Source: Glycera tridactyla | Taxonomy: Eukaryota | Assembly: GCA_965644265.1 (NCBI GenBank) | Contig: OZ286459.1 | Coordinates: 108,810,001 to 108,874,000 of the forward strand | Reading direction: 5' to 3' | Length of the DNA stretch: 64,000 bases | Shown here: positions 1 to 62,404 of the stretch, piece by piece | Layout of the letters: each line of letters begins with the position of its first letter | How positions within the stretch are numbered: position 1 is the stretch's first letter | Program-made: the position numbers and the translations under genes | The notes under the pieces: generated by a model | The model's input: only the letters and a program-made list of their open reading frames with translations | What the model was told of the DNA's origin: nothing | Database searches by the model: none

Positions 1-1435
1 ACAGAACTGACCAAAATATATGCCAGTGGCTCAGCAGTCACATTTGAAAATGATTCCATTTCTTGAATGAACTGGAAGCTGTCATAACTACAGTAAGCAA
101 GGATCAGTCATTGATAAAACAGATTTCTATTGGAAATCCAAGTTTGGATTTAAAACATTTTATAATAACACACAGTGTCTTTCCGTATTCTTCAAATCTG
201 TTAATTGAATTGATCTATCTCATATTCCTGCTGCAATTGTGCTAAATTTCCTCCAGAAACCTGTAGTTCACTCCAGTAATTGACAAGTCAAATGAAAAAA
301 GTTCAAATTTTATTTCAGAATTGGTACCAAAATACTTTGGTGATAGTTTGCAAGGAGACTGCGTGGAAAAACAAGCGATGAAGTCTACTCAGTTGAAAGC
401 AGAACACTCAAGAGAACCTTACTCTACACACATTTTGCAGGATGAAAAAGGTTGCATTTGCGAGGTCCATGTGGCGGGAATAAAGAAGTAGTACTAGTAG
501 TAGCATTCCCAATGAGTTGGATCATATCTCAGAGACTCTCAGAAGTTTTTACCTAATTTCGCTATTTTTACGTAACCGCCTGTAAGACAAGGTCATTGGA
601 TTATTTTTAGTTCCAGATTTCCCACGGTTGTCACTATCAACTGGGTGTACATTTTCTACCTCTTGGATGAATCTTACTTCAAAATAGCATGATTAATAAT
701 CACATGAAAATAGAAACAATGAACATGAGAGTGGGTGGCCAATCGAACCAAAAACAAACACTATCAGAGACCTGTTTCCAACAAGTTTCAAGATGACATG
801 ACCAATCCCAGTATACAGCTGACATTACCTTGATGACTATGTGTTGATGGGATATCTAAGAATATTCCCATTTTACTCAAGTTTCCGGCATCGTTTCAGA
901 AACCAGTCATGTCAGAATAGAGATAAAAAACCATGCCTGAGATCTCTGTGACCACATCAAGCCCTTGAAGCTAGCAACACATGAGGCAAGGACTGAGTTT
1001 TCAGAACCCCAATCAGGGCATTGAAAATAATGAAAATATCTACTGCATCAATTTCCTTTTCAACTAGAGGTAGATGAAATCTCAATAAATATATATGTGG
1101 CTTAAAAGTGATGATGCTTCCTATTGTCTCTAATATACTGTATTCTCTCTCCGATTCTGTGGCAGTATACCATGAATCGACATACAGGAGACAAAAAGTC
1201 TGCTTGTATCGCTCCATATTGTCCACATGTTAGTAGGTGGTGAACACTAGTGACTCGGGAGTTGTATGGCCACCTTTGAGTGAATGTTTCAAACATGGGT
1301 ACAATAAAATGCATGCACACATACATTAAATCAATCTAAAATGCACTTAAAAATGTATTTTCACAAATGTCATGAGGACAACATAATTCAAACACATGAC
1401 ACACAACATGCACTGGAGAAACAGATGATCCAGAA

Positions 1436-1639
1436 GTGCCATCTAGTGTACAGTAGTAGATTTGCAGTGATGTGGTTTGACCACTGAGCTCCATCTAGTG
1501 AGGGTTTCCAGAGTGCTGCCACCTGGTGCGGTGGCTGATAGAAGAAACATCAACCAGAAAAAGTAACGAAAGTGACATCATCACTCAGAGATAGTTGTCT
1601 TCTGATGAAAAGATTTCACAATCAAAAGCCACCTAGTGG
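1436..1639 (-). promoter_or_regulatory. Cluster of four co-oriented CTCF-like motifs
   Basis: Minus-strand ACACTAGATGGCAC (1449-1436), TCACTAGATGGAGC (1501-1488), GCACCAGGTGGCAGC (1529-1515) and CCACTAGGTGGC (1639-1628). Confidence 0.55.
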
Positions 1640-2981
1640 CAGAATTGAGAGTTGGAGACACTGAGAGAGAATATCGATTGAAACGGAAATGAACCTTCAT
1701 GCAGCTTGCATGATGAATGGAAAGCATACTGGCACAGCCAGGGTAGGTCCACAGAGCCGAATGCTCTGCTATATGCAGAGTGACATCTTGTGGAAGATGA
1801 GAGAGCAATGCCAGCAATATCCATGATCTTTAATCTAGCAGTGACAGAGAAGGAGAGGAGAGTGGCTCTAGATGAGATCAGAGAGAATAACAATCAGGTA
1901 ATAATTTAGTTTTACATTTCTCGATTGCATCACCTATCCTGAAATAATACCTAGCATATTCTTTCTCCACAATTTTTACAGTAATTAGAAGTGCATTATT
2001 TATATCAAACACATTTTGCTGAGACACACTCACATATTTGTATTACTGCTCCATCTAACATACTACACAGATTGATGAACATAAAATAATGATCCCGAAT
2101 GAATAAGATGATGACATCGCTTTGGAGTTCACATTCAATCGTTGCAAGCCAGGGGGAATGGGAACATAATACGGGGCTCTTTCGATTACTTAGGGTTCAT
2201 CAATTGTCAAGAAAGACTGTCTGTTTGATACTCAATAGAATTGAATTTAATTAGTGATGCAGTTAATGGGCCAATGATTTTTGGATGTCTGATGGATTGA
2301 GCTCCATACTCACCAGGATAAACTGCAAAGTCTGATGACGGATTATAGTTAGAAATTGTATCCATGGAAGATTCATGCTATATCCCACAGATGTTTGATC
2401 TTGATAAGGTTGAATCACACCAAATGGAATATAACTTGAATATTTCACAGGCATAATCTCTTGCTTTTATACCACACATATCAATCACAATGTAACATTC
2501 CAGCATGTAGGAGGTGGCAATTATATTCCTAGTGGGCACATATGGGAAATCCTGTGCTGTGAGATTTCTTCATTTGCCCAGAAAACTAAAGTGTGCTGGT
2601 CATTGCCGAATCATGGTGATATTTCTGATGTCTGATAAAGAACCAATTGGGCACATTCATGAGTAAACCAAGCTCCATTTTTTCATTTAATGTGCGCCGG
2701 ACATAGCTTAGGAATATCTCTACCGTTACACCAATAGCAACCTCCTCTTCCAAGATATTTGTGGTATAAAGCCTATTTCACTAGTCTACAGAAACACCCT
2801 TCTCATGGTTCTAGATGTTTTCCATCCCAGAAGATAATTTGTGAATCCAAAAGATATCAGCGGAAATACAAGGTCATCCCAAGCTCATGTGAACTTCATT
2901 GATGGAGTACAAAATGGACAGTGAGCATATAATCACTCTGACATCTGGGGTGGTGAAATCAAGATTCATACTTTAACAAAC

Positions 2982-3191
2982 TTTATTATTATCCAGGGAG
3001 CAGAGGGAAAGCAGGCTGTGGGCTAAAAACATTTAATCTGAATGATCTTTGCTGGCTGGCTGGCTGAAAAGAAGATATACATGATCCACCTAGAGCCAAA
3101 TACTCGGAGGTGCCAAATAAGGAGAGCAAGATGAGAAGTTGGGGGAGAATGAAGGAGTGTGAGAGGTCTGCTGACGAGAAGCAGGAGTGAT
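2982..3191 (-). other. Candidate alternative terminal or poison exon: acceptor at 3191, in-frame TAG at 3092-3090, AATAAA at 2987-2982
   Basis: CACTAAC-acttgctttctctcttcag|ATC. Phase-0 reading gives 33 codons and then TAG. Confidence 0.45.
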
Positions 3192-5781
3192 CTGAAGAGA
3201 GAAAGCAAGTGTTAGTGATTGAAACGATGCCAGTCATGGAGTGTACTAACATCAGGCGAGCGAGTGAGTGAGAGTTCTCGGATCACGTACATGATCCCAT
3301 TCACAATTATCATACCGCATCAATTTCTTGATCAAATTATCAATGAACAAAGGCATACAAAAGAAACACAAGTACTACATTCAAAACAATGACTAAGTGG
3401 GCAATGGTAACTTATGTATGATTATTTGCATCAGTTCTCTCATTGTCACATCCACGTCTCCCAACCAGAACTTACAACTTCATCCAAGTTCAAACAAGCC
3501 TTCAGAAGCTTTGCCATATAAATGAAAATAAATCTAGGCATCATAATTGATTATCACAGAATTGCATGAAGGGTGTTCAAAATATGGGGCATATATCCTA
3601 AGATACTCAAGGATGGGGTATTTCAAATTTGAATTAAGCCAATGAGGGGAGCTACTGCTCACCGGGCAACTACAAAGAGAGCCAAAATGAACTGATATTT
3701 CAAATGTCCGGCAATATCTGTCAAAAAAGGCCGATATCTGAACAGAAGTTGTCCCAATCTTTATGTAACACTGTGATCTGAAATAATATAACCATGCAAT
3801 ATCTTGTGGTTGGGAATTGGCTTGATGCAACAATGAGAGAGGTCTATGGTTGGGCAAAATACCATGATACTTCTTATGGATCTAGGGGGCTAGTGAGGAT
3901 GGATACAGAGTGAAAGGTATGTACACATTACAGAGCATCCTGTAAGACTTCCATGGACTCTCACTAGTTTGAATCCTTTTGCAAATCTCACAGGATGGTG
4001 TAGAATAGGCTTTGAGTCTTATTCTCGTACCACAGATATAACTAAATATTAGCAGACATATTCCAACAGAAAATTGTATGTGTCTATATGGTACAGCCCA
4101 GAGCCTTACAAGTACCCGAAATCAAGTTCAGTGTCCAGATGAACTATGCCCCATCCGGGCATGGTCTATGGATTTCCTGTCATCAGGAATACGATGAGGA
4201 CACCATACATTCTTGATCTTCCATTACTAATGAAACGTCAAATCTGTGGTAAAATAGCTCTACTGCTGCATATGACTGACAACCTTTATCAAGACAAACA
4301 CTAAGCACTTCGACGTTGTATCAAATTGACACTTGCATTGTCAATTGATTCTGTTCACTTTTCACCTGTGCCATTTTCAACGATTGGTTACTTTCAAAAA
4401 TGGCTGGGATCACTTGCCTACAAGAAAATTCCATGTCATCTGAGCACATTTTATTTGCCCCAATTAACCCCCATCAGGGAGATGATAAATGATCAAAATT
4501 TCAGCTTGAAACTAATTCTGGTGATCTGAACATGCAAGTGTCAATCAGTAGAGGAATGGTACTGCTGGGTTGTATCAAGGAAAGGTACAACCCACTGCAT
4601 TATTTTCCTTTGCATCAATTCTGTTAGGATAGTTCATGCTGTGAGAGTGGCCCTAGATATTTCATTTGGTGCTACAAGCTTCATAACTAAGAAGGCATCC
4701 ACAAACAAGCATCCCTTTGAAAACTTGACGAATGAATGTCATCCAGAAAACCGGAGTATAATTTTCAAGTCAAACTTGAAGTTCTAGTCAGATTTTAACA
4801 AATTCTGAATTCTTGTTTTTTACGTAGTTTTTGAAAAAAAAAATCTCATCACTGGATACCATCTTTAGGCAGGCATAAACCATCAAATTTGTCTATGATT
4901 AATGACAAGCAGGCTACATGTATTATGTAAGGTGAGGTAGAGAAAATGCAGCTTTATTTTAATTCAAAAAAGAGAAAATGCAGCTAAATAGTTCCCAAGC
5001 ATGTGCAAAAGTTACTGGTTCCCTCATTTAATGTGCACTAACCCATTATGACAGGCAGGAAACTTTCATACTACAGGGATGAAGATGGTGACTGATATCC
5101 AAGCTTCAAGAGCAATACTTTCCTTGGAGGATGCATCAGAAGCTCCATTACATTACATTAATGTGCGCAACATTAAAGCTCAGCCATCACAAGAAACTGT
5201 TACCAAGTGTAAATAGCTTGGCCTGGTGGGTACGAAATGGCTTTTGGAAGATTTTCGAATGGGATGGAGTGATATCAGCTTTAAACTCACATCAAACAAA
5301 GTGCTCACCTTGAACACCAAATGTAAAATGAGGGGAAAATTTCAGGATGTATAGTGGCAAACTTGCAAACCACTTAAACTGCCCAAAAAATGAGAGAAAG
5401 TGACACTTCCATATCTGAACTGATGAGAGGGAAAATAATTTCAATGAGGTAACATTGAGTGTAATAGTCTGTTCTATTCAAGAGATCTCAGTCTCCCCTG
5501 GAGTTACTAATTTTGCAAAAACCGACCAGACTGAAGCAGTGTGCAAGATGCCTTAGAAGCAGCATCTAGAATTTGCAAGTATTGTGAACTGGCTTGACCA
5601 TGTTTTGAAACAACATTCTTGATCACAAATGTTTCTAGTGAAAAGATAAAAAGGAGGAAATAAGCTGCATTCAGACCGATTAAAAATCTACACAGCTTAA
5701 CATGCAACAGTTGGCAGTTTGGTTCGGAGGTGACCCATTATCCTAGTTCTTTGTCCCAACAATATTAGAGCACGGTAGTAC

Positions 5782-5813
5782 CTCGTAACTTTGGCGAGGC
5801 TGCGAGGTGAAAC
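5782..5813 (-). other. Candidate 32-nt exon VSPRSLAKVT, resembling the start of vertebrate PTBP1 exon 11
   Basis: tttctcatcacag|GTTTCACCTCGCAGCCTCGCCAAAGTTACGAG|gtacta. The donor is weak. Confidence 0.25.
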
Positions 5814-6700
5814 CTGTGATGAGAAACCACTCAACAAAACCAACCTCTCGTGGGGCAGCACTTGCCTGGAACAGCTTCGCTATTTGACAATATTTCCTCT
5901 AATGTGAGGTCATTTCCTTTGAAAGATTGGGTGGCATTTAGGGTGGTCTCCCATCACAGGTTTCACGTACTACTAAATAGCAATTATAGTCTTGATAATC
6001 TCTGCCACCAGCACTGGATAACTACCTATAGGTCCAATTATGCAGAATGATCATCCCACTTAAATCTGAACATACAAGTGATTGATTGATTGATGGAGCA
6101 TAAAACAGACAATGGCATAAATTCTTCACATATATATGGCCATCCATCTTTTTCCCCATGTTTTTAAACTCAATATGACAATACATGGCATTTCTAACTC
6201 TGAACCTGAAAAATATGGAAGAAATATTTATGTCCACATATCCACATAGGCCAATTTTCCATATGACCAATGGATGTCTCCGTAGACAGATTAGACCATA
6301 ATGTGGTGGTGCATGAATTGACTGAAAAATGATCAACAATCTTTTTTTTTCTTTTCTGATCAACAATCTTGTATGTTCAGACAAACGCATTTCCAAAAGC
6401 AAAAATGGGTATGAGCATACACAGCCCATACACACCTCATTACTATCTTAGCACTTCACAGCAGGTCAGCATGCAGTCAAAAGGTCATCTAAACTACATG
6501 ATGGAAGTTACCATTGCCCACATAATGTCCGTACAAATACAGATTCACATAAAATTTACATCACATTTCTTTCAACAATTGAAAATCTCAGTTTTGGTCA
6601 AAGAAGAGACAGACAGCTCAGGGGGATGAGCATGAGTATGAAAGACATTATGAGCTTGGTCTGAGGTGTGCAGGTGTGAAGACACTGGTGTGAGTCCTAC

Positions 6701-6834
6701 CTGCTCATTGAGGTTGGAGACGAGAAGCACTGGTCCAGTGGCGGGTTGTCCTGGCATGCGCATGCCCGCGGCACCGAGAGCTTGTATGTGCTGTGCTGGC
6801 AGTCCAAGGCCAAATGGTGATGCCGCCGCTGCTG
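6701..6834 (-). CDS. PTBP1: PTB coding exon, end of linker and RRM3 beta1 (134 nt, phase 1-0): AAAASPFGLGLPAQHIQALGAAGMRMPGQPATGPVLLVSNLNEQ
   Basis: Acceptor atgttcag|CAG, donor CAG|gtagga. VLLVSNLN is the PTB RRM3 start. Confidence 0.95.
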
Positions 6835-8651
6835 CTGAACATATCAAGAACAATCAGTCAAAATCAAAATCACCCTGGTAAATTCGAAATAATGAAACAT
6901 TCATTCAATTCCAACACTGTTAAACGCAAGTCATGCGGACACATTATCCGTAATCCAGTGCGATATCACAAAAATTTCCCTCATATAGTCTCCAATGCAT
7001 CTGATTCCAGCTGATTCCGAATTTTAATTCTTGCATGAAAATGAGCATCAGAAATGCAGTGATGCAAGTGCATAAAAACTAAATTTCCTGAAACCTGACC
7101 TAATTCCCTGAAACGACACCCCTATACTTGGATTTTGAATTTCGTGACTAATTTCCTGAATTCAGGAAATTTCCTGAAAATTGGAAATGGAAGCCTGATT
7201 TATGAAATTTTGGCTACCATATATGAACCAATATGGAGCACTTATGAAGTTGGAGACATTACATGTGGTAAGGCGATGGTTTCGTGTAAATTTATTGTGA
7301 GCAAGCATGATCCCAGCTGGATCAAACACAGATGCTTCATCAAACATCGAAGCTGGAAATTCTACTGAAAACAGGTGCAAGTACTGCTTTCACATGCATC
7401 CATTACAAGTTGCATCTGAAATATCTGCCCTGGCTAGTTGCATCACTGCAAATATGGTGAACTTTGATGTACCATTCATAATATCGCTCTTCTAAAGCTC
7501 AATAGAAGTAGTAGCTGCGATCAATGTCGAGTGAAAAAGTGGAAATTTTTGGAAGTAGTGAAATGCATATACGACATAGATTTGGTCATCCAGATACACC
7601 CAGGCAACACTGTGGATGGTATTTTGAGAATAGATCTGGCTGCACATGCAAACTAAGTCACTCCTGAATGAGAAAACTTCTCAGCCTATGACTGGTCAGC
7701 ACCGACGAACCTATTTAAATCACGACATCAACCAATAAATTATTACATGTATGCAATGAGACCAACGAGTGAGACCAATCGACATGTAGAAAATCACACC
7801 TAGCTTTGAGAAAATGGAGGAACGCTAAGTTACTCTAGTGTCAAAGACTGATCCTGGACATAAATTATGGTACTGCATCAAACTTGATGTAACTCGCCAA
7901 ACAAAATGTGTCAAGGTAGTCAAAAATTGGCCTGGGATGAGTCTGTTTGTAGCATAAAACAGACCACTTTGATCAAGCATATACCCCAATAATGCCAAAA
8001 TCAATATTTGAGGACTTTAGTATGGGAGAATTAAGAAGTCATTGGGAACAACAAAAACTGACAAAGGCTCAGAGATATCACTTGCAAAAATTATGAGAAT
8101 GAAAGTTTTGACTGATGATTCTCATTGCCATGTGCTCTGTGTGAGTCATAAAATTCTCTAAAGCAGCATGATAACCAATAGTGTGAAAAATGTTCAAATG
8201 TTTTGAATAATTGAAAAATCTAAAGATGATGGATTGATCTGAGTGTGGATTTTGGTATCCAAGACACCAGACAGAGTTGAAGTTGGATGCGAAAGCTAAT
8301 CATTTCATCAAGATGAATAAAAAACCAAGATGAGATCCGGAGTCGTAGAAAATACCTGAACTGGGATGTCAACCACTGATCATCAAAATGTGATTATTTC
8401 AATTTCAGAAAATCTAATGATATGAAATAGTTTTGGGGCAAAATGGACTGTTGTGAATATTATGATATACAATCGAATAATCACCAAACTTATCATATCG
8501 ATAACCTGACAAATATGTGAGAATAGATCCTATGTTATAAAGAGACAAGTTGAGAACCGAGAAGAGACCATCGATAGAACAGATTGAAGAGAGACAGAGG
8601 AACCAAGAAGTAGTTCATGCAACACACGATGGACGGAATTAGTAATCTTAC

Positions 8652-8678
8652 CTTGCAAACCTAGATGAGGTTGACCAG
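8652..8678 (-). CDS. PTBP1: 27-nt microexon (phase 1-1): (A)GQPHLGLQ
   Basis: Long tract ttctcttctgttttttcttttcattcactccag|CTGGTCAACCTCATCTAGGTTTGCAAG|gtaaga. Stop-free in the PTB frame. Confidence 0.75.
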
Positions 8679-8944
8679 CTGGAGTGAATGAAAAGAAAAA
8701 ACAGAAGAGAACCCCATTTTATACATCACCACTGTCAGCGGGGACAACACATACAATCAGTACATCGACACCGAATACACAAATATGGAAATCGAAATCT
8801 AATATTAGATTGGGCAAACCATGTGTGTCAAGCAGCACTTTTTCTCCTAGTTAGGATTTTTCAACAATCAATTAACGACATGGGATTCTGGGGCATGGGG
8901 GTTCTTTATGAGTGAGCAAATTATGCTGGAAATGAAATTCTTAC

Positions 8945-8986
8945 CTTTGTTCATGACCGGTTCCGGTCGATCCATGACTTACTGAA
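8945..8986 (-). other. Candidate regulated exon with one donor and three acceptors: 42 nt (in-frame TAA), 37 nt (frameshift) or 33 nt (in frame, MDRPEPVMNK)
   Basis: Pyrimidine tract ctgtccatcctccctttcccccAAG-ttCAG-tAAG and strong donor AAG|gtaaga at 8944. Confidence 0.6.
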
Positions 8987-10173
8987 CTTGGGGGAAAGGG
9001 AGGATGGACAGTAAGAACTAACTAAATAAATGTAATATGTGGATGGTGAATGAACTAGCTAAGTACGGATGACAGTGTATACAGATCACAAGGCCACATT
9101 TAGCAAATGTCCAGTAGCCCCTGTTTTATTTTTTTATTTTTCCAGTAGCTGTTTCACAAAAGCATAAGTGCCCTAACACTGATGTAATCAGTTGATAGCA
9201 GTTATCAACTGTTAGCAACAATTTTGAACACTCAAACTTCACTGAAATGGGGCTCCGTGGACATCCCGGCAGCATTAGTGACAGTAGCCATAGCCACAAC
9301 AACCACAATATAACGAGAAACATGCTGTAAATACACATTGCAGGAAAAATCCAGCGATACAATGCCAAAATTTATAATTCCCACAATTATTCACATATGC
9401 TCTTTGTAAGCCTCTGTAAATATTTGAGGAAACAAAATTAACTTTGAACTTCTAAACAAATCATAACACAGACACCAATATTTTTTGCAGACTACCCACC
9501 TGACCTTCAAACAAGTCACAGAAAAATCTTTCATATTATTTATTTTTCAACTTTTATTGGAGGGGGGGGGGGGGGGGGGGCATATATTTTGATGAGCATT
9601 TGCTGATAGTCATAGCTGGATCATATAAGATATCACAGTCAAATGCAAAGCAATGACAATACTGACTTCGGTGATAAACTATTATCACTGCTCATTGAAA
9701 TTGCTGCAATGTTATTCTAAGCCCAAATAAGTTTCACCAGACTATATGATCTCTGCAGTAAGATAATCATTTCCATTTGCACCAGCAAGCTTTCAAAATC
9801 TGGTGCTTGGTTCAATGACAGTTTCATGAATGGTCTTCATTCCAGGAATGATATTCACTGTTGAGACAGCACTCATGAATTTGATTCATGAAATATGCAC
9901 AAAGAGATCCAAATGACAGTCAATCTTCTATAGAGTCATCCAGAGCAGAAACATATAAGTGCGTAATAACAAATATCAGGTACAGGGAACCAACTCCTCA
10001 TCCTATTGTTACCAATCTGTCAGACCTAGACTATTAGAAATAAATTTTGAGAGCTACTCCAATGAGATATAAGTCATATCGATTACTAGAGTAACACTCA
10101 TTTTTGCACATCACACTGATGAAATGTCGCATACAGAAAACACTTTGGGGACTGATTATGGTAACAAACATAC

Positions 10174-10191
10174 AGTGGGTAGGGTCGAGGG
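10174..10191 (-). CDS. Candidate 18-nt microexon (phase 1-1), (A)LDPTH. An upstream in-frame acceptor at 10230 would give 57 nt.
   Basis: Branch ACTAAC, then cttcgtcccacctccag|CCCTCGACCCTACCCACT|gtatgt. Stop-free in the PTB frame. No homology recognised. Confidence 0.5.
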
Positions 10192-10820
10192 CTGGAGGTG
10201 GGACGAAGTTCACCATGTTAGTTCTCACTACTAGCAAATGAATTTGCTGGATCTGTACACATGTCGTCTGTTGCTAGATGATTCATCTTCACATGATACT
10301 GATGGAATGGGTGTGCTTGTGCACGGCCGCTCACCAAATAAGCATGCAGATGTGCTGTGAGCAAAATGTGGAGGGATGGAAACAGAGTCAAAGATCACTC
10401 TTAAGCCAAATTATTCAGCAAGAATTCCCATCAACAGACTGTTCTTGCTGGCCTGTGGTCTAGTTTCAATAATCTATAGATGTCTATAGCTTGAAATCCA
10501 ATAAATGTGGCAGCATTTTCGCAGCACCTTAACACCAAAATTGGCAAAATTGAGTGAACATCTAGGAAGCAGGATCTCCAAATGAAAGGAAAGAGCCTGC
10601 TGATTTTTGAGAATAATACTGCCTCAACTACTAGCAGTATCATCAATTAAATTTATTGTTTTAAAATATCATCAAATTACAAAGATTTCTTCAATCGGAA
10701 TACACTCCACATTGAGCTAACATTGGGCAGACAAATAGGGTTTAGTAGTAGCGTAAGCAGGTGGCTAGTTGAAGGGAAAGCATGGATGGCTGATTGATAA
10801 GCGGTAAAGCGGGTGCGTAC

Positions 10821-10901
10821 CTCCTAATCCTGGCCCGTACGCTGTTAGTTGAGATCCAAAACCCGGCATTGCAAACGGTGACGCCAGCACACCGGGGGCA
10901 C
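10821..10901 (-). CDS. PTBP1: Linker cassette exon (81 nt, phase 1-1): (S)APGVLASPFAMPGFGSQLTAYGPGLG, homologous to vertebrate PTBP1 exon 9
   Basis: Acceptor gtgaag|GTGCCCCCGGT, donor GAG|gtacgc. Stop-free and frame-preserving. The peptide resembles GAPGIISASPYAGAGF (recalled). Branch-like AACTGAC lies about 25 nt upstream. Confidence 0.85.
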
Positions 10902-12622
10902 CTTCACAATCCGGGGCAAATAATAGTCAGTTAAAACATGCTATTAATAGCACAAAAACAGCAATTAACAGTGGTACGCAGCATGTAGGCGGCCAATATT
11001 TCCACCCAGCTCATCCCCACACTTGAAATCAAACACAATAAAGCTTTTCACCCAAAAACATTCACATTTTCACTCCAAGAGGAAAGGCAATGGATGCCAG
11101 CCAGACTGCAGAAAATGTTGATGTTTTTGAGAACAGGGCATCAACTGGTAGTGCCAATGTATAAAACTAAATCAAGAATGAATATTCGATCAAAATAACA
11201 GGGCGCTTCCCACCAAAGTTGTCTGAAATTGGCAGGCAGTTGGTAGCCAAGGTGTCTACACAAAGTGAAAGCATATCTTCAGTGAAATGGCCTCAAGCTT
11301 TTTGAAAATGCTTCACTAATTTCTGTGTGTAGATCATAGTATTAGTTCTTTGACAAAGATATGATTTGTATGTGAGCAAAACATTATGACTCATATTCAA
11401 GGGGTAAATGGAGCTAATTCAGCAGGGCATCCTTATCAAATGCCTCCAAGATCCCTTTCATTTCACGAGCTTAACCCTTACTGTGTCATATTCTCTTAAA
11501 AATGCAACTACATTTCATCTGCCACCTTCAGTAATTTGGTATTTCTCTACGTCCATTATTCATCATGTCTTTCTTAAATTCTGAAAGATTTTGAAGATGG
11601 CAATACAAATGTACATCCATGGTACACTTAATGAACCACTGAATAGAAGACAGTCAGCAAAATCTTTCTTTGACTGAAATCAACTGCCAACATTCACACT
11701 GAAAATATAGCTTTAATATCTCCACAGAGGATACACAGAAACGTCACTCAAGTGAGCTGTGAATATCTGCCAAATATGGCTGACTTAGGAATTCAACTTT
11801 CTCATACCTATGACCAGATTTTTGAGTGGGAAAATCGTGATACTTTATTCAAGCCATCTGAGAACCATCTGGTTGCAACTTTCCATGGAATGATGAGACT
11901 GATCATAATTTACGAGATGAAAGATGTGTGGTCCAGGATGTGCAGATACCTGAAAGGCTGATCATGGAAGGCAAGACAAAAGAGAAATGTTAGCAGTCCA
12001 AATTCACCATCTTACAGAGAATCTGATCAGATGATCGATCACAAGAAGTACGATTGGTTCTCTTGATGCACGAGTTAAGCTCTTACAATAGGAGCTGTTA
12101 CATGATGACGACATGCAAAGAAAGTCTCCGGTAGAAATAACAAGATGCACTCTAAAGAGATTCATCTATTCAGGGTGATGTATTTATAATGATTAAGGAG
12201 CTTATCAAAACATCTGCTATAGTGTGCAAGCACAACTCTGTGACCAACAGATGCACGGCCTAGCAGGTATCCCAATAACCAGTGAACACCAGTAAGGGTT
12301 AAGACTCATCTTGCATCTAGATTTAGTTACACAAATACAGAGGCCAAATAAAAGCATTAGGCATTTATTGCATAAAAACAAAACTGATTCCATAGTATAT
12401 TCCATGCTAAGTTGACTAAGTGAAAGGCAAATACGCCATACATAATCACCTATCTTGATTGTCAACTGAGCTTGAAATGTACTACCCCTAAATATGGTGA
12501 CACAGGACTAGAACTGCATTCCCACAGGGTACAATTCTAGACATACATTTTTCAAGACAACATTACTGTTGGTAGTGACATAGTGAGAGAGGTGAGAGTG
12601 AGCCTATACACGATATGTATGC

Positions 12623-29085: not shown

Positions 29086-29178
29086 TTCAACAGTAAATGA
29101 CCTTTCTATAAAGACCACCTGTCTGTGAGGGCCATTTTTTATGCGACCGAAGGCGGTTTTTATAGATAGGTTCAACTG
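29086..29178 (+). mobile_element. Half copy of the same MITE family (copy D)
   Basis: TTCAACAGTAAATGACCTTTCTATAAAGACCACCT...AGGTTCAACTG|TA aligns to the right half of copy C. Confidence 0.85.
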
Positions 29179-29288
29179 TATACCAACTTTGGTTATTGGG
29201 CAATGAGGGAACTTGTTCATGAAGAACAGTCAGGACCACCGAATAGAACAGAGTTCAGGATAAAATCATATCTATTGAATGTATTTAC

Positions 29289-39508: not shown

Positions 39509-39685
39509 CAGTCAAACCTCTCTATAAAGACCGCCATGGTCGCATCAAAAAGTGGTTTTTATAGGGAGGTGGTCTTTATAGAGAGGTCATTTACTGTTGA
39601 AAATACTACCATGGTCGCAGCTCAGCGCGGTCCTTATAGAGAGGTGGTCTTTATAGAGAGGTGGTCTTTAGAGCAGGTTCGACTG
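39509..39685 (-). mobile_element. 177-bp TA-flanked MITE (copy B)
   Basis: TA|CAGTCAAACCT...AGGTTCGACTG|TA with internal TCTATAAAGACCACC units. It is a reverse-complement homologue of 44029-44205. Confidence 0.9.
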
Positions 39686-43284: not shown

Positions 43285-44028
43285 TGATATTCCCTGAGAT
43301 GCAGGTTTTAATTTTCACATAGTTCCAGGAAGTGCCTGGAGTATTATATCACAGCATCCTTTATCAGAAGTTCCCTTATCAAAGGGCAGATGTTTGGCGT
43401 CAGCCCCCCCCCCCCCCCACCATAGGGGTGGGGGTGGTGTGGGGAGGGGGGTAGCAGGGTCTCTTGTGTCCATTAACTGCTGCACCCGGCTCCAACCATC
43501 ATGCCTGATATCAAATTATGCAGCCATTACATCATGCTGGAAACCCCACCGGGGATCTATTACACAGAGACCCATCACAGCTTCAACCACTCACCCCAGC
43601 AGGCCTATCAGCAGGACCTGCTTCTGCTATGAGGCCCTTTCATATGTCTACACTGAGTTCATGTTCCTCTGCCATTATCAAATTCTAGGACTTACTGGCA
43701 ACCATAAGAGGCATCTGATTCTTTTGTCAGGAGTATTCAACAAGTCGGTTCAGAATGTTTTTAAGGATTGTGTGGGTCTCAAAGTTCCCATTGCACATCA
43801 ACCAAATAAATCTGAGGAGGGGGGGGGGGGGGGATCCGTTAAGTTTGAACAGCTTCTCAATCTGGATTTCGCCTGCAAATTTCCGCCACTGGTCGTCGAT
43901 TCTTACTGAGGATTTCACTACACTGACAGCAAAAAAATCTTGTGTATGAATTGAAACAACCTCCACAAGGAATCAGATGATTTCTGAAAATGTAATCTCT
44001 ACATTACAATGATGTATTGTGAAGTATA

Positions 44029-44205
44029 CAGTTGAACCTGCTCTAAAGACCACCTTTCTATAAAGACCACCTCTCTATAAAGACCACATAGGCTGCGACC
44101 GTGGTAGTATTTTCAACGGTAAATGACTACTCTATAAAGACCATCTGCCCATAAAGACCGCTTTTTGATGCGACCGAAGGCGGTCTTTGTAGATAAGTTC
44201 AACTG
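44029..44205 (+). mobile_element. 177-bp TA-flanked MITE (copy C, same family as B)
   Basis: TA|CAGTTGAACCT...AAGTTCAACTG|TA. Same length as the inverted copy B and colinear with it. Confidence 0.9.
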
Positions 44206-49596: not shown

Positions 49597-51384
49597 CTTT
49601 AAATCAAACAACGGACATGAATTTATCAATCAAACTGTCACAAAGCAAGCATAAGCTCAAGATATCATGTCAACCTGTCACGTCCCCACAGGAAAAAAAA
49701 AGCTTCCATCACCTACAAAGTTAGAAAAATAAATTCAAACATATCAGTGAATTCACGCCAAAGTAGTGCTTTATGTATCCACTAGATGGCAAGCTTGAAC
49801 GGGCAGTCGACTGATATTGATAAGTCCGTCTTATGCATGAGGACACCAATGTTGGTGAGCGTGCCGTCCATCTAATCATATCGTGCAGAAAAACACTGCT
49901 GTACGCCAAGCCTAGATTAATCTTCACTTGATGAAATACTGATTCCAGCTCCTCATGACACAGCATCTTCTATTAATTCTGCGCAGTCAGTTGACTCTCA
50001 AGTCTTAAGGGACAAAATTACTCTTCTTATTTTTCAAATGGTAGCTACACAATGGTATCTCCGTTATTAGCTCGGACAGCACACTCAGGTATGCATGCAC
50101 ATGTATGCAATTGCGCATGCATACACACATCTGTATGGGAATACAGGGATGATTGTGTTAAAGGCAATAATGATTTGGATGGGCGAAGCAAAGGTTGGTC
50201 ACACAAAAGATGCTAGTCCCTGGACCTAATCCTCTACAATGGAGACTAGCATGAATAATTCCCTCACCAACCTTTCTCTGCCAGTACATTTTTTTATCAC
50301 GGCAAACCAGGTAATCAGTATCTTGATGTGACAAAGAAGTTTGATGAAAATGGTCGATCAAGTTTGCATCACACAAATGGCTCATAATAAACAAACTAAG
50401 ACAACCAGCTTTATTCCCATAATGATTTTTTCTTTGTGTGTGTGTGGGGGGGGGGGGGGGGGGTAGAAGTTAAGAAGGTGTGAGTGGTTTCTCACAAGAG
50501 CATATGACTCTGTCTAATGGAAGAGGGGCATGAAAAAGTGATCTCTTGAAACAGGGGGCATTTTAACACACCAAAAGTCTCATGATCATCTGGCACTACA
50601 GACCAAAGAGGGGTCACTGAAAGGGTTTTTAAGTTGGCAGTGGGTCTTATTTTTTGGCAAGCAGATGCATTGGAAGGGCACAATTCATCAGAATGACATT
50701 GGAAACTTTGGCCATCTAACTCACAGCAAAACTGTTCAGATGCCGGTCTGCATGCATTTCAACAAAAAGCGTGCAATTGGCATTATGTCAGCCAAGTGAT
50801 ATTTAATCCTTTCGTTCAGGTATTTGTTTTGCTGGATCACGATCTGGTATGATCATGAAAATGCATGCACACATTCAACCAAGGCTGCCAAGCCGCAGCT
50901 AAATCATAAACATTCTGTGTTTACATCCAATCTCAAAAGGAAATCAATACAGGTATCTTCAATTTAATCCAAAACCAGTCATCATCACAGTCTTAGCAAG
51001 AGGCGAATCTAGACGTCTTTTTGACACATAATTCTCAAAACTGACCCCCTGAAGTTTCAGTATTGCATGGATGTCAATCTTTGATGACCAAAATTAGTAA
51101 TAATAAGACTTATAAAGAGTGATGATGGCACTATTTACAATACTCAGAAATAAAGATTATGATTTACTTTGGGTAAATATTCAGTGAAAAATGCCGTTTG
51201 TTTTGGTTAAAGAGTGACACCCACTCCCAAAATCATAATGGTTGGCATCTATGGACAATGGACATCTTCTTTGCATGAGGATTACATGTAGTGGAATCCA
51301 TCAATTTGAATACTCCATACTGAAATCCTGGCAGCATCACTGGTCATTGTGTCATCATATTCAGCACAACAAGCACTTGCTGGA

Positions 51385-61700: not shown

Positions 61701-62404
61701 GTTCTTACCACAAACTACACTCCTTGCTATCTTCCTCTACTCCCCTAAATGACCCAAATGGTAGCTAAGAGTTAGGTAGTGTTGAGTTTCAGGATGACAG
61801 ACTGATTGAGGGAGATCGAATGACAACCAACCAGTGGGAATGATCCTATCTAGAAGGATGTGAGCCTAATCTCGTATTTTGAGGTGGCCAGCATGTGCTA
61901 CAGACAGGATACACAGTGATACTGGTCAGATACCAGAACACAACACCATCACTTCCTTATTCCTGTATACTGGCACCACATATCAAGTGGGACCACATAT
62001 CCTAATGACCATGACCTAACACACAACTCACAACTCTGGACACTATGATCAACACACTCTTCATTTTGTTTGGAGATTTGAGCGTCTGTTCTGAATGTCA
62101 TGTTTGATAATTCGAAAGCTCTAGGTTGAAACTAGTTCCCAATGACCATACAGCTTCAAACTTTTTAAAACAATTTCTAAATTTATGCCATTTTCATCAA
62201 ACTTCTGTCTGAGAACATTATGGAAGGTTGGGGGAGGGGGTGTATGCTAGGGTTCCGTAGGGGGAAAAAAGTTTGGAAGATATGTCAAGCCATTCCACAG
62301 GAATGCTGCCGGTGGAAGTGCACACATTTATATATCATGTCCAATAGCACAAATATAGACAAACAATATTCTGCTTGCATAAGATGCTGAAGAAAATAAC
62401 TCAC

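What the first reader, a model, noticed from the sequence alone, without database searches (positions are those of the whole stretch)
2982..3300. Orphan strong 3' splice site leading to a stop and AATAAA: possible RRM1-2-only PTB isoform
Seen: consensus branch CACTAAC, tract UUGCUUUCUCUCUUCAG and a 53-nt AG-free zone. Joined to the 6701 donor it reads ...NLNEQ|ITPASRQQ...SIWL* (102 nt). The TAG is directly followed by gtggat (a possible donor). A second strong acceptor at 3063 gives PASQQ...LPG*, followed at once by AATAAA (2987-2982). The whole block is CU-rich. Inference: it is either an alternative last exon producing a truncated PTB lacking the RNA-looping RRM3-4 didomain (possible dominant negative) or a poison exon. 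Either would be a PTB-sensing feedback element.
Basis: partly seen in the sequence, partly recalled or inferred. Interest (0 to 1): 0.7.

Follow-up and report, generated by a model that had tools for sequence, protein, structure and literature searches.

The report
Candidate poison exon in annelid PTB gene
A long intron of an annelid's PTB splicing-regulator gene holds an unusually strong, pyrimidine-rich exon-like block ending in a stop codon; one other public data set carries exactly this block letter for letter, so it is probably a conserved "unproductive" exon, but no RNA data could be obtained to show that it is used.

Summary
On the minus strand, in the intron over 6.7 kb long after the PTB exon ending ...VLLVSNLNEQ (6835-6701), there are:
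- CACTAAC at 3217-3211;
- a 13/14-pyrimidine tract plus AG;
- a 102-nt block (3191-3090) in frame with the 6701 donor, ending TAG|GTGGAT;
- a second acceptor at 3063;
- AATAAA at 2987-2982.

An acceptor of this quality is expected 0.0014 times in 6.7 kb. The block is in the 99.9th percentile for pyrimidine content and PTB-type motifs.

New evidence:
- The only public run holding the region (X1, unknown kind, contigs) has one contig identical over 3195-3082. That is the exon plus 8 nt of its donor. The contig then diverges, and the rest of about 6 kb is unmatched.
- A perfect 17-bp complement (6521-6505 with 3413-3397) could bring donor and acceptor together.

Not shown: any use of the exon. 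No RNA run or junction was available, and no orthologous intron was reachable.

The reading frame says nothing about coding, because all three frames are open. The conserved block stops before the AATAAA. The motif layout is that of a PTB-repressed exon, which would not give homeostatic feedback.

Best reading (about 0.4): a conserved PTB-repressible poison cassette exon. A truncated-protein terminal exon is at about 0.15, and an unused decoy or a duplicated fragment at about 0.4.

The parts
6701..6835 (-). Upstream PTB exon (linker plus first strand of RRM3, ...GPVLLVSNLNEQ). It ends in phase 0 and has the weak donor CAG|GTAGGA.
   Evidence: Translation. tblastn alignment to the PTB proteins P0105 and P0076. 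The boundary falls at the same protein position as in relatives (NLNE-x | V-I/V-T).
6505..6521 (-). Arm 1 of a 17-bp perfect long-range complement, about 180 nt downstream of the 6701 donor.
   Evidence: Self-blastn. k-mer scan: it is the only inverted match of 16 nt or more in the 6.7-kb intron part. The extended duplex is -34 kcal/mol.
3397..3413 (-). Arm 2 of the complement, about 205 nt upstream of the acceptor at 3191.
   Evidence: The match is sharply bounded; flanks are about 30% identical, so it is not part of a longer inverted repeat.
3211..3217 (-). Branch-point-like CACTAAC.
3192..3208 (-). Polypyrimidine tract TTGCTTTCTCTCTTC plus AG. It contains CUCUCU and UCUU motifs.
   Evidence: chance expectation.
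3090..3191 (-). Exon A: 102 nt, CU-rich, in frame with the 6701 donor; its last codon is TAG.
   Evidence: Covered at 100% identity by the X1 contig.
3084..3089 (-). Weak donor-like GTGGAT directly after the TAG.
   Evidence: It lies inside the block held identically by X1, which ends at 3082.
3082..3195 (-). The 114-nt block identical in run X1. The contig ends at 3195 and carries 85 nt of unlike sequence beyond 3082.
   Evidence: tables 7 and 8. The unlike flank is not found anywhere in the window.
3063..3080 (-). Second acceptor: tract GTATATCTTCTTTTCAG, exon start 3063. Its AG-free zone is only 24 nt. It also serves as a UCUUCUUUUC PTB-type site just downstream of exon A.
2982..2987 (-). 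AATAAA, overlapping the TAA stops of the exon-B frame, 103 nt after the exon-A stop.
   Evidence: The hexamer occurs 0.6 per kb on this strand.

Best explanation
Exon A (3191-3090) is a conserved, normally skipped 'poison' cassette exon in the intron that precedes the RRM3 exons of a single annelid PTB/hephaestus-type gene.

How it would work:
- When spliced in between the 6701 donor and the RRM3 exons, which lie beyond the window start, its last codon TAG ends the reading frame after RRM1-RRM2. The mRNA is then unproductive: it is degraded by NMD or yields only a truncated protein.
- The acceptor is near-optimal and the donor (TAG|GTGGAT) is weak. The tract, the exon body and the first 25 nt downstream are loaded with UCUU/CUCUCU-type motifs. 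PTB itself is therefore expected to bind across the exon and keep it skipped.
- Loss of PTB would let the exon in. This gives a self-reinforcing off-switch, or suppression of a cryptic exon, rather than homeostatic negative feedback.
- A 17-bp RNA helix between 6521-6505 and 3413-3397 could loop out 3.1 kb and place the acceptor about 400 nt from the donor, making the distant exon competitive.

Shown: the sequence elements, their rarity, the identical outside copy of exactly this block, and the complementarity.

Inferred: that the exon is used, NMD, PTB binding, the direction of regulation, and that the helix forms.
For: - The host gene is PTB. The RRM2 exon hits PTB-family proteins at up to 90% identity, exons map onto named PTB proteins, and no RRM3/4 exon lies in 1-6700.
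- Acceptor quality: it is the only such site in 128 kb of sequence counting both strands, against 0.0014 expected in the intron part.
- Exon A is 102 nt, in frame, and ends TAG|GT.
- Pyrimidine content and PTB-motif density are both in the 99.9th percentile.
- One X1 contig of 199 nt at depth 4 matches 3195-3082 with 0 differences and then runs on for 85 nt of unlike sequence. Apart from a 36-nt SINE core, nothing else of 1050-7000 is matched at 90% or more, although the run holds 1,027 Mb of contigs. This fits DNA of a related species in which only this block is conserved: the exon plus 5' splice-site positions +1 to +8.
- It is not a known RNA family and is not structured (z = 0.34).
- It has no second copy in the window.
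- The 17-bp complement is the only one of 16 nt or more in the intron part, with about 0.001 expected.
[quoted passage not shown] PTBP1-repressed exons carry sites upstream, within and just downstream of the exon (PMC3907290).
Against: - No transcript evidence exists. No RNA run holds the region, no junction was seen, and no protein in the collections carries the peptide.
- The kind and organism of X1 are unknown. The contig could come from a second copy, another haplotype or a duplicated fragment rather than an orthologue.
- The X1 contig ends 4 nt upstream of the AG, so conservation of the tract and branch point is not shown.
- The donor is weak: no G at +5.
- Short orphan inverted matches of 17 nt or more are commoner in this window than chance (about 3 against 0.1 expected), which lowers the weight of the 17-bp helix.
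- The acceptor criteria were set after the fact.
Confidence: 0.4

Rival explanations
1. Unused decoy. This is a chance or decaying pseudo-exon in a long intron, perhaps a remnant of a partial duplication of the true RRM3 exon's 5' end. It is never, or only negligibly, spliced and has no regulatory role.
For: - There is no expression evidence.
- The donor is weak, the open frame is compositional and the AATAAA is unremarkable.
- The strongest orphan acceptor in a window is what a reader would pick, so there is a selection effect.
- Exon A starts with ATCACTCC (I-T-P), the same 8-mer as a second ITP...LFTLG|GT pseudo-exon-like stretch at 5276-5205. Relatives' real exon starts V-I/V-T-P/T. This hints at decayed copies.
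- Other notes on this genome describe copied acceptors that transcripts ignore (s1-329791).
Against: - The joint acceptor features are expected 0.0014 times in this intron part.
- An outside data set holds precisely this block at 100% and almost nothing else of the intron. That is unexpected for neutral sequence unless X1 carries a very recent copy.
Confidence: 0.28
2. Alternative last exon. Splicing goes from 6701 to 3191 (or 3063), with read-through of the weak GTGGAT donor and cleavage about 20-30 nt after AATAAA (2987-2982). The stable mRNA would encode RRM1-RRM2-linker plus a 33-residue tail, lacking RRM3-4.
For: - A strong 3' splice site, a weak 5' splice site and a canonical hexamer 103 nt after the stop make the standard layout of an intronic-polyadenylation terminal exon.
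- There is GU-rich sequence about 40-55 nt after the hexamer.
Against: - The identical block in X1 stops at 3082, inside the would-be 3' UTR and 95 nt before the hexamer.
- The hexamer is common by chance.
- The tail peptide has no relatives and no coding signal.
- There are no 3'-end data.
Confidence: 0.15
3. A duplicated or mobile fragment. The 114-nt block is part of a low-copy repeat, segmental duplication or retro-copied piece of another CU-rich transcript, and X1's contig comes from the other copy. The exon-like features would then be incidental.
For: - The X1 contig continues into sequence that is nowhere in the window.
- The break at 3082 is not a canonical splice junction on either strand (reading).
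- The only other X1 matches are to a SINE core.
Against: - There is no second copy, terminal inverted repeat or direct repeat in 64 kb.
- Depth 4 is at the low end of the depths of the other X1 contigs laid here (2.8-30), so the block is not high-copy.
- No neighbouring part of a larger element is matched.
- The block borders coincide with the splice signals to within 4 and 8 nt.
Confidence: 0.12
4. A conserved non-exonic element. The block would be a PTB-binding intronic silencer or enhancer platform, or a DNA-level enhancer, that regulates the neighbouring RRM3 micro-exon or transcription without ever being an exon.
For: - The motif density is extreme.
- Vertebrate PTB and nPTB regulated exons have long conserved, PTB-site-rich upstream regions (PMC1940037).
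Against: - The block is more than 3 kb from both flanking exons within the window.
- Its borders fit an AG| and a |GT.
- A consensus branch point serves no purpose in a mere binding platform.
Confidence: 0.05

Closest known systems
Vertebrate PTBP1 exon 11 / PTBP2 (nPTB) exon 10 unproductive splicing (AS-NMD auto- and cross-regulation; PMC1940037)
   Same: It is the same gene family and the same part of the gene: the junction between the RRM2-RRM3 linker and RRM3. The intron here follows ...LLVSNLNE-x, the position where relatives' proteins continue with V-I/V-T-P-DALFTLFG. Both have PTB-motif-rich surroundings, an extended AG-free zone and an unproductive outcome. nPTB exon 10 lies in an ultraconserved element, and here a 114-nt block is held identically by an outside run.
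   Different: In vertebrates the regulated exon is a 34-nt coding exon, and its skipping causes the frameshift. Here the candidate is an extra, stop-carrying exon whose inclusion would be unproductive. With PTB as a repressor, the sign of the feedback is therefore reversed. Use of the exon is not shown here.
Poison cassette exons of splicing regulators (SR and hnRNP genes, often ultraconserved; the Arabidopsis PTB homologues use a PTC-carrying cassette exon, the latter from my own knowledge of Stauffer et al. 2010)
   Same: A stop-carrying cassette exon inside a splicing-factor gene, binding motifs for the encoded protein, and conservation at the nucleotide rather than the codon level.
   Different: There is no inclusion or NMD evidence. 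Conservation rests on one contig of unknown origin. The layout predicts repression rather than activation by the gene's own protein.
Intronic polyadenylation / skipped terminal exons giving truncated RNA-binding proteins
   Same: A strong acceptor, an in-frame stop, a weak donor, and AATAAA about 100 nt downstream.
   Different: The identical block does not extend to the poly(A) signal, and there are no 3'-end data.
PTBP1/PTBP2-repressed cryptic exons flanked by CU-rich sequence (own knowledge: Ling et al. 2016)
   Same: An intronic pseudo-exon with CU-rich elements over the 3' splice site and exon, unproductive if included.
   Different: Those exons are described as non-conserved. This one sits in the PTB gene itself and appears to be conserved.
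Long-range RNA helices ('RNA bridges') that bring distant splice sites together
   Same: A 17-bp perfect complement lies about 180 nt after the donor and about 205 nt before the acceptor, looping out 3.1 kb.
   Different: There is no covariation or conservation test. Short orphan inverted matches are over-represented in this window. An earlier follow-up on another gene of this genome judged a similar 18-nt case a copying accident (s1-320753).

Membership tests
PTB / hnRNP I / hephaestus gene (host gene) | Exons encoding PTB-type RRM1 and RRM2 and the start of RRM3, in the canonical order. | tested here: met
   phmmer with the RRM2 exon gave 405 hits at E<=1e-10, the best at 90% identity. tblastn of P0076, P0105 and P0072 maps RRM1, RRM2 and the NLNE exon in order on the minus strand, and the hits are named PTB/hephaestus family. 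Single exons are too short for Pfam. RRM3-4 lie outside the window.
AS-NMD poison cassette exon | Functional 3' and 5' splice sites flanking an internal exon. | tested here: inconclusive
   The 3' splice site is exceptional. The 5' splice site TAG|GTGGAT is weak but lies inside the block held identically by X1.
AS-NMD poison cassette exon | A premature in-frame stop with coding exons downstream. | tested here: met
   TAG is the last codon of the 102-nt exon, in the frame of the 6701 donor. RRM3-4 exons are absent from 1-6700 and so must lie downstream.
AS-NMD poison cassette exon | Inclusion seen in transcripts, rising when NMD is blocked. | not testable with these tools
Only one run holds the region, it is not on record as RNA, and it is kept as contigs.
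AS-NMD poison cassette exon | Nucleotide-level conservation across species. | tested here: inconclusive
   There is a 114/114 identity in X1 beside unmatched flanks, but X1's organism is coded. The nearest reachable relatives (L001-L003) are 75% identical in a coding exon, and their contigs are too short to reach the intron.
Autoregulatory element of the encoded RNA-binding protein | Clustered binding motifs for the gene's own protein at the regulated exon. | tested here: met
   UCUU, CUCUCU, UUCU and UCUC density is in the 99.9th percentile of the transcribed strand. Binding itself was not tested.
Alternative last exon (intronic polyadenylation) | A poly(A) signal with mapped cleavage downstream of the stop. 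| tested here: inconclusive
   AATAAA is present at 2987-2982 but is expected about 7% of the time by chance. There are no 3'-end data, and the identical block ends before it.
Recursive splice site / RS-exon | A 3' splice site directly followed by a 5' splice site (AG|GTRAGT), so that a donor is regenerated after the first step. | tested here: not met
   The sequence after the AG is ATCACT, and the join GAGCAG|ATCACT regenerates no GT.
Known structured RNA (Rfam) | A match to a covariance model, or a stable fold. | tested here: not met
   No Rfam match at E<=1 in 1-8000. The fold z-score is 0.34.
Transposable element or other repeat | Further copies, terminal repeats, or an element-encoded protein. 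| tested here: inconclusive
   There are none within 64 kb, and no Pfam or protein hits. Genome-wide copy number is not testable here.

The most novel reading that the evidence does not exclude
The block is an invertebrate ultraconserved poison exon of the single PTB gene. It is identical between annelid species whose introns are otherwise unalignable, is kept silent by PTB itself, and is brought to its donor by a 17-bp RNA bridge. The gene would then carry a self-locking (bistable) off-switch at the same RRM2/RRM3 boundary where vertebrates evolved the opposite, homeostatic exon-skipping loop.
Probability: 0.1. Interest if true: 0.65.

Novelty: new member of a known kind. Interest (0 to 1): 0.4.

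Why it matters
Splicing regulators commonly control themselves through unproductive splicing. For PTB this is known in vertebrates (skipping of a 34-nt exon) and in plants (a poison exon). As far as my searches reached, it has not been described in lophotrochozoans.

A conserved stop-carrying exon at the same domain boundary in an annelid would show that this boundary is a recurrent control point, reached by different mechanisms. Because the motif layout predicts repression by PTB, it would also give a testable case of positive rather than negative feedback. If the exon is unused, the locus is simply an example of how convincing a decoy acceptor can look.

Tried and rejected
- RNA evidence. 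The look-up of sequencing runs on 2850-3350 listed only X1, which is not on record as RNA. Read laying on 1050-7000 showed no joints.
- X1 contig as spliced RNA: rejected. The break at 3082|3081 has no GT or AG on either strand. The 30 known letters of the unlike flank do not encode RRM3 and occur nowhere in the window.
- Orthologues.
  - Word searches with the NLNEQ exon, with the 97-aa open frame over the block, and with a PTB profile that included the window's exons gave nothing close.
  - The big search gave draft-genome fragments only 75% identical in a coding exon, on contigs of 3-8 kb.
  - An exact look-up of ten window ORFs showed this genome is not in the protein collection, so DNA beyond the window start could not be fetched.
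  - Metagenome scans for an exon-A 28-mer and for the NLNEQ exon peptide found nothing (one search was a size slip).
- Known ncRNA or structure: none.
- tRNA or SINE head nearby: none.
- Repeats within 1-12000 and blastn of 2600-3700 against the window: nothing except the 17-nt complement.
- Recursive splice site: rejected.
- Pfam on single exons and on the tail peptide: nothing, because they are too short.
- Three big-search hits (P0067, P0068, P0075) look like vertebrate, possibly human, PTBP1 read-through products. I left them aside and compared nothing with them.
Full report
**Setting.** The window carries, on its minus strand, most of a PTB/hnRNP I/hephaestus-type gene of an annelid.
- The exons are at 62551-62405 and 38727-38587 (RRM1); ...-29289, 23483-~23430, ~21585-21528 and 15994-15820 (RRM2); and 6835-6701 (linker plus ...GPVLLVSNLNEQ, the first strand of RRM3).
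- They were placed by translation and by tblastn with PTB proteins returned by the big search.
- The 6835-6701 exon ends in phase 0 at a weak donor, CAG|GTAGGA.
- No RRM3 or RRM4 exon, not even a short TP-DALFTLFG-type exon, lies in 1-6700. The intron is therefore longer than 6.7 kb and the next constitutive exon is beyond the window start.
- In relatives the protein continues V-I/V-T-P/T-DALFTLFGVYGDV right after NLNE-x. [quoted passage not shown]

**The observation.**
- CACTAAC lies at 3217-3211, and TTGCTTTCTCTCTTCAG at 3208-3192.
- The AG-free zone is 52 nt.
- The 102-nt block 3191-3090 reads NLNEQ|ITPASRQQ...SIWL* when joined to the 6701 donor.
- The TAG is followed by GTGGAT.
- A second acceptor gives an exon start at 3063.
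- AATAAA lies at 2987-2982, overlapping three TAA codons.

**Is it more than chance?**
- I counted acceptors with a pyrimidine at -3, at least 13 of 14 pyrimidines before it, an AG-free zone of at least 40 nt and a CTAAC 15-45 nt upstream. This site is the only one on either strand of the window.
- Sequences simulated with the strand's dinucleotide statistics give 0.013 such sites per 64 kb, or 0.0014 for the 6.7 kb of intron. The criteria were fitted to the site, so the true significance is weaker, but the site is clearly unusual.
- The block is the second most pyrimidine-rich 120-nt window of the transcribed strand, and UCUU/CUCUCU-type motifs reach the 99.9th percentile.
AATAAA occurs 0.6 times per kb on this strand, so about 7% by chance within 110 nt of the stop. 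All three reading frames are open over the block because stops need purines, so the 33-residue tail is no sign of coding.

**What the outside data show.** Only one public run holds any of 2850-3350: X1, kind unknown, kept as contigs, with 20% of the sampled words. I laid it on 1050-7000.
- One 199-nt contig at depth 4 matches 3195-3082 with no difference. It ends at 3195 and carries 85 further letters beyond 3082 that are unlike the window.
- Those letters are found nowhere in the 64 kb.
- The only other matches are four contigs on a 36-nt SINE-like core at 5930-5966, with 2-3 mismatches.
- The matched stretch is the predicted exon plus 4 nt of the acceptor and 8 nt of the donor.
- The break at 3082 is not a splice junction: the window continues TGTATA, with no GT at the break and no AG on the other strand. 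The known 30 letters of the flank do not encode RRM3. The contig is therefore not a spliced mRNA of this locus.
- X1 holds 1,027 Mb in 16.5 million contigs. A DNA run of the same species at that scale would cover most of the 6 kb, and it covers 2.5%.
- The simplest coherent reading is low-coverage DNA of a related species. Only this block stays at or above 90% identity (it is at 100%), and the shared SINE core also matches.
- Under that reading, 114 identical letters beside unalignable intron means strong selection at the nucleotide level. The end of identity 8 nt after the GT fits a conserved 5' splice site.
- I cannot exclude that the contig comes from a second copy or a structural variant. 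The organism is coded, and my single calls of both read tools are spent.
- The absence of the 6835-6701 exon from the laid contigs means nothing, because the tool silently drops human-like conserved sequence.

**A further feature.** 6521-6505 is the perfect reverse complement of 3413-3397 (17 bp, 19 of 20). The extended duplex is -34 kcal/mol.
- The arms lie about 180 nt after the 6701 donor and about 205 nt before the 3191 acceptor.
- It is the only inverted match of 16 nt or more in the intron part, where about 0.001 is expected. The flanks are unrelated.
- Against over-reading it: the window has about three such orphan matches of 17 nt or more where 0.1 is expected. An earlier follow-up judged an 18-nt case in another gene of this genome a copying accident.

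**What it is not.**
- There is no Rfam family at E<=1 in 1-8000 and no stable fold.
- There is no tRNA and no repeat copy or terminal repeat within the window.
- It is not a recursive splice site, because AG is followed by ATCACT.
- There is no Pfam or protein relative of any frame.

**Mechanism.** I commit to a poison cassette exon as the most likely reading (about 0.4).
- The 3' splice site is optimal, the stop is the last codon, the donor is weak but lies within the conserved block, and the conserved block does not reach the poly(A) signal.
- A terminal-exon isoform (about 0.15) remains possible, because a weak donor followed by AATAAA is the usual layout for intronic polyadenylation. Both outcomes could coexist.
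PTB-type motifs cover the branch point and tract, the exon and the first 25 nt downstream (UCUUCUUUUC at 3075-3066). In mammals this is the layout of exons that PTBP1 represses, whereas enhanced exons rarely have exonic sites (PMC3907290).
- If annelid PTB behaves alike, abundant PTB keeps the exon out and falling PTB lets it in. That is a self-reinforcing switch or cryptic-exon suppression, not homeostasis. This step is an inference from mammalian data.

**Rivals.**
- An unused decoy (about 0.28). It is supported by the lack of any expression evidence and by a hint that exon A and a second stretch (5276-5205, reading ITP...AKLFTLG|GT) share the 8-mer ATCACTCC and may be decayed copies of the true RRM3 exon start.
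- A duplicated or mobile fragment (about 0.12).
- A conserved non-exonic PTB platform (about 0.05).

**What I could not reach.**
- Orthologous introns. The three word searches, the big search, two metagenome scans and an exact look-up of window ORFs gave only distant relatives on short contigs. They also showed that this genome is not in the protein collection.
- Any RNA data for this species.

**Verdict.** If real, it is a new member of a known kind (AS-NMD control of a splicing regulator). Interest is moderate, pending a simple junction-read test.

Noticed in passing
window 5205-5285 (minus strand): ...aaag|CTGAT ATC ACT CCA ... GCC AAG CTA TTT ACA CTT G|GTAACAG reads ITP...AKLFTLG|gt. This resembles the expected first RRM3 exon of relatives (V-I/V-T-P-DALFTLFG|), but with about 14 extra codons and a poor acceptor. 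It shares ATCACTCC with the first 8 nt of exon A. It may be a decayed exon copy.
   Followed up: partly
window 62188-62206 and 50335-50353: A perfect 19-nt inverted complement. Both arms lie inside the intron after the first RRM1 exon, and one arm is about 200 nt after that exon's donor. It is the same kind of orphan long-range complement as the 17-mer near exon A.
   Followed up: no
window 29086-29183, 39516-39685, 44024-44117, 5930-5966: Copies of a SINE/MITE-like family with the core GTGGTCTTTATAGAGAGGT and a GG-L-Y-R-x-V-type pseudo-ORF. The core at 5930-5966 is matched in run X1 at depths up to 30 with 2-3 mismatches, so the family is shared with X1's organism.
   Followed up: partly
window 6695-6701 (minus strand): The donor of the exon that precedes the long intron is weak (CAG|GTAGGA), unlike most other donors of the gene (GTGAGT or GTAAGT). 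This fits a regulated junction.
   Followed up: no
L001 2294-2375 versus window 21605-21521: In a draft genome of a distant relative (GCA_022702875.1), the only alignable DNA besides the RRM2c exon (75% identity) is the preceding RRM2 exon (81%). Introns are not alignable, which shows how diverged the reachable relatives are.
   Followed up: yes
proteins P0067, P0068, P0075 (big search): These vertebrate-like, possibly human, PTBP1 products read through into intron after ...LLVSNLNPE or earlier. They are database examples of predicted RRM1-2-only products from the same boundary.
   Followed up: no
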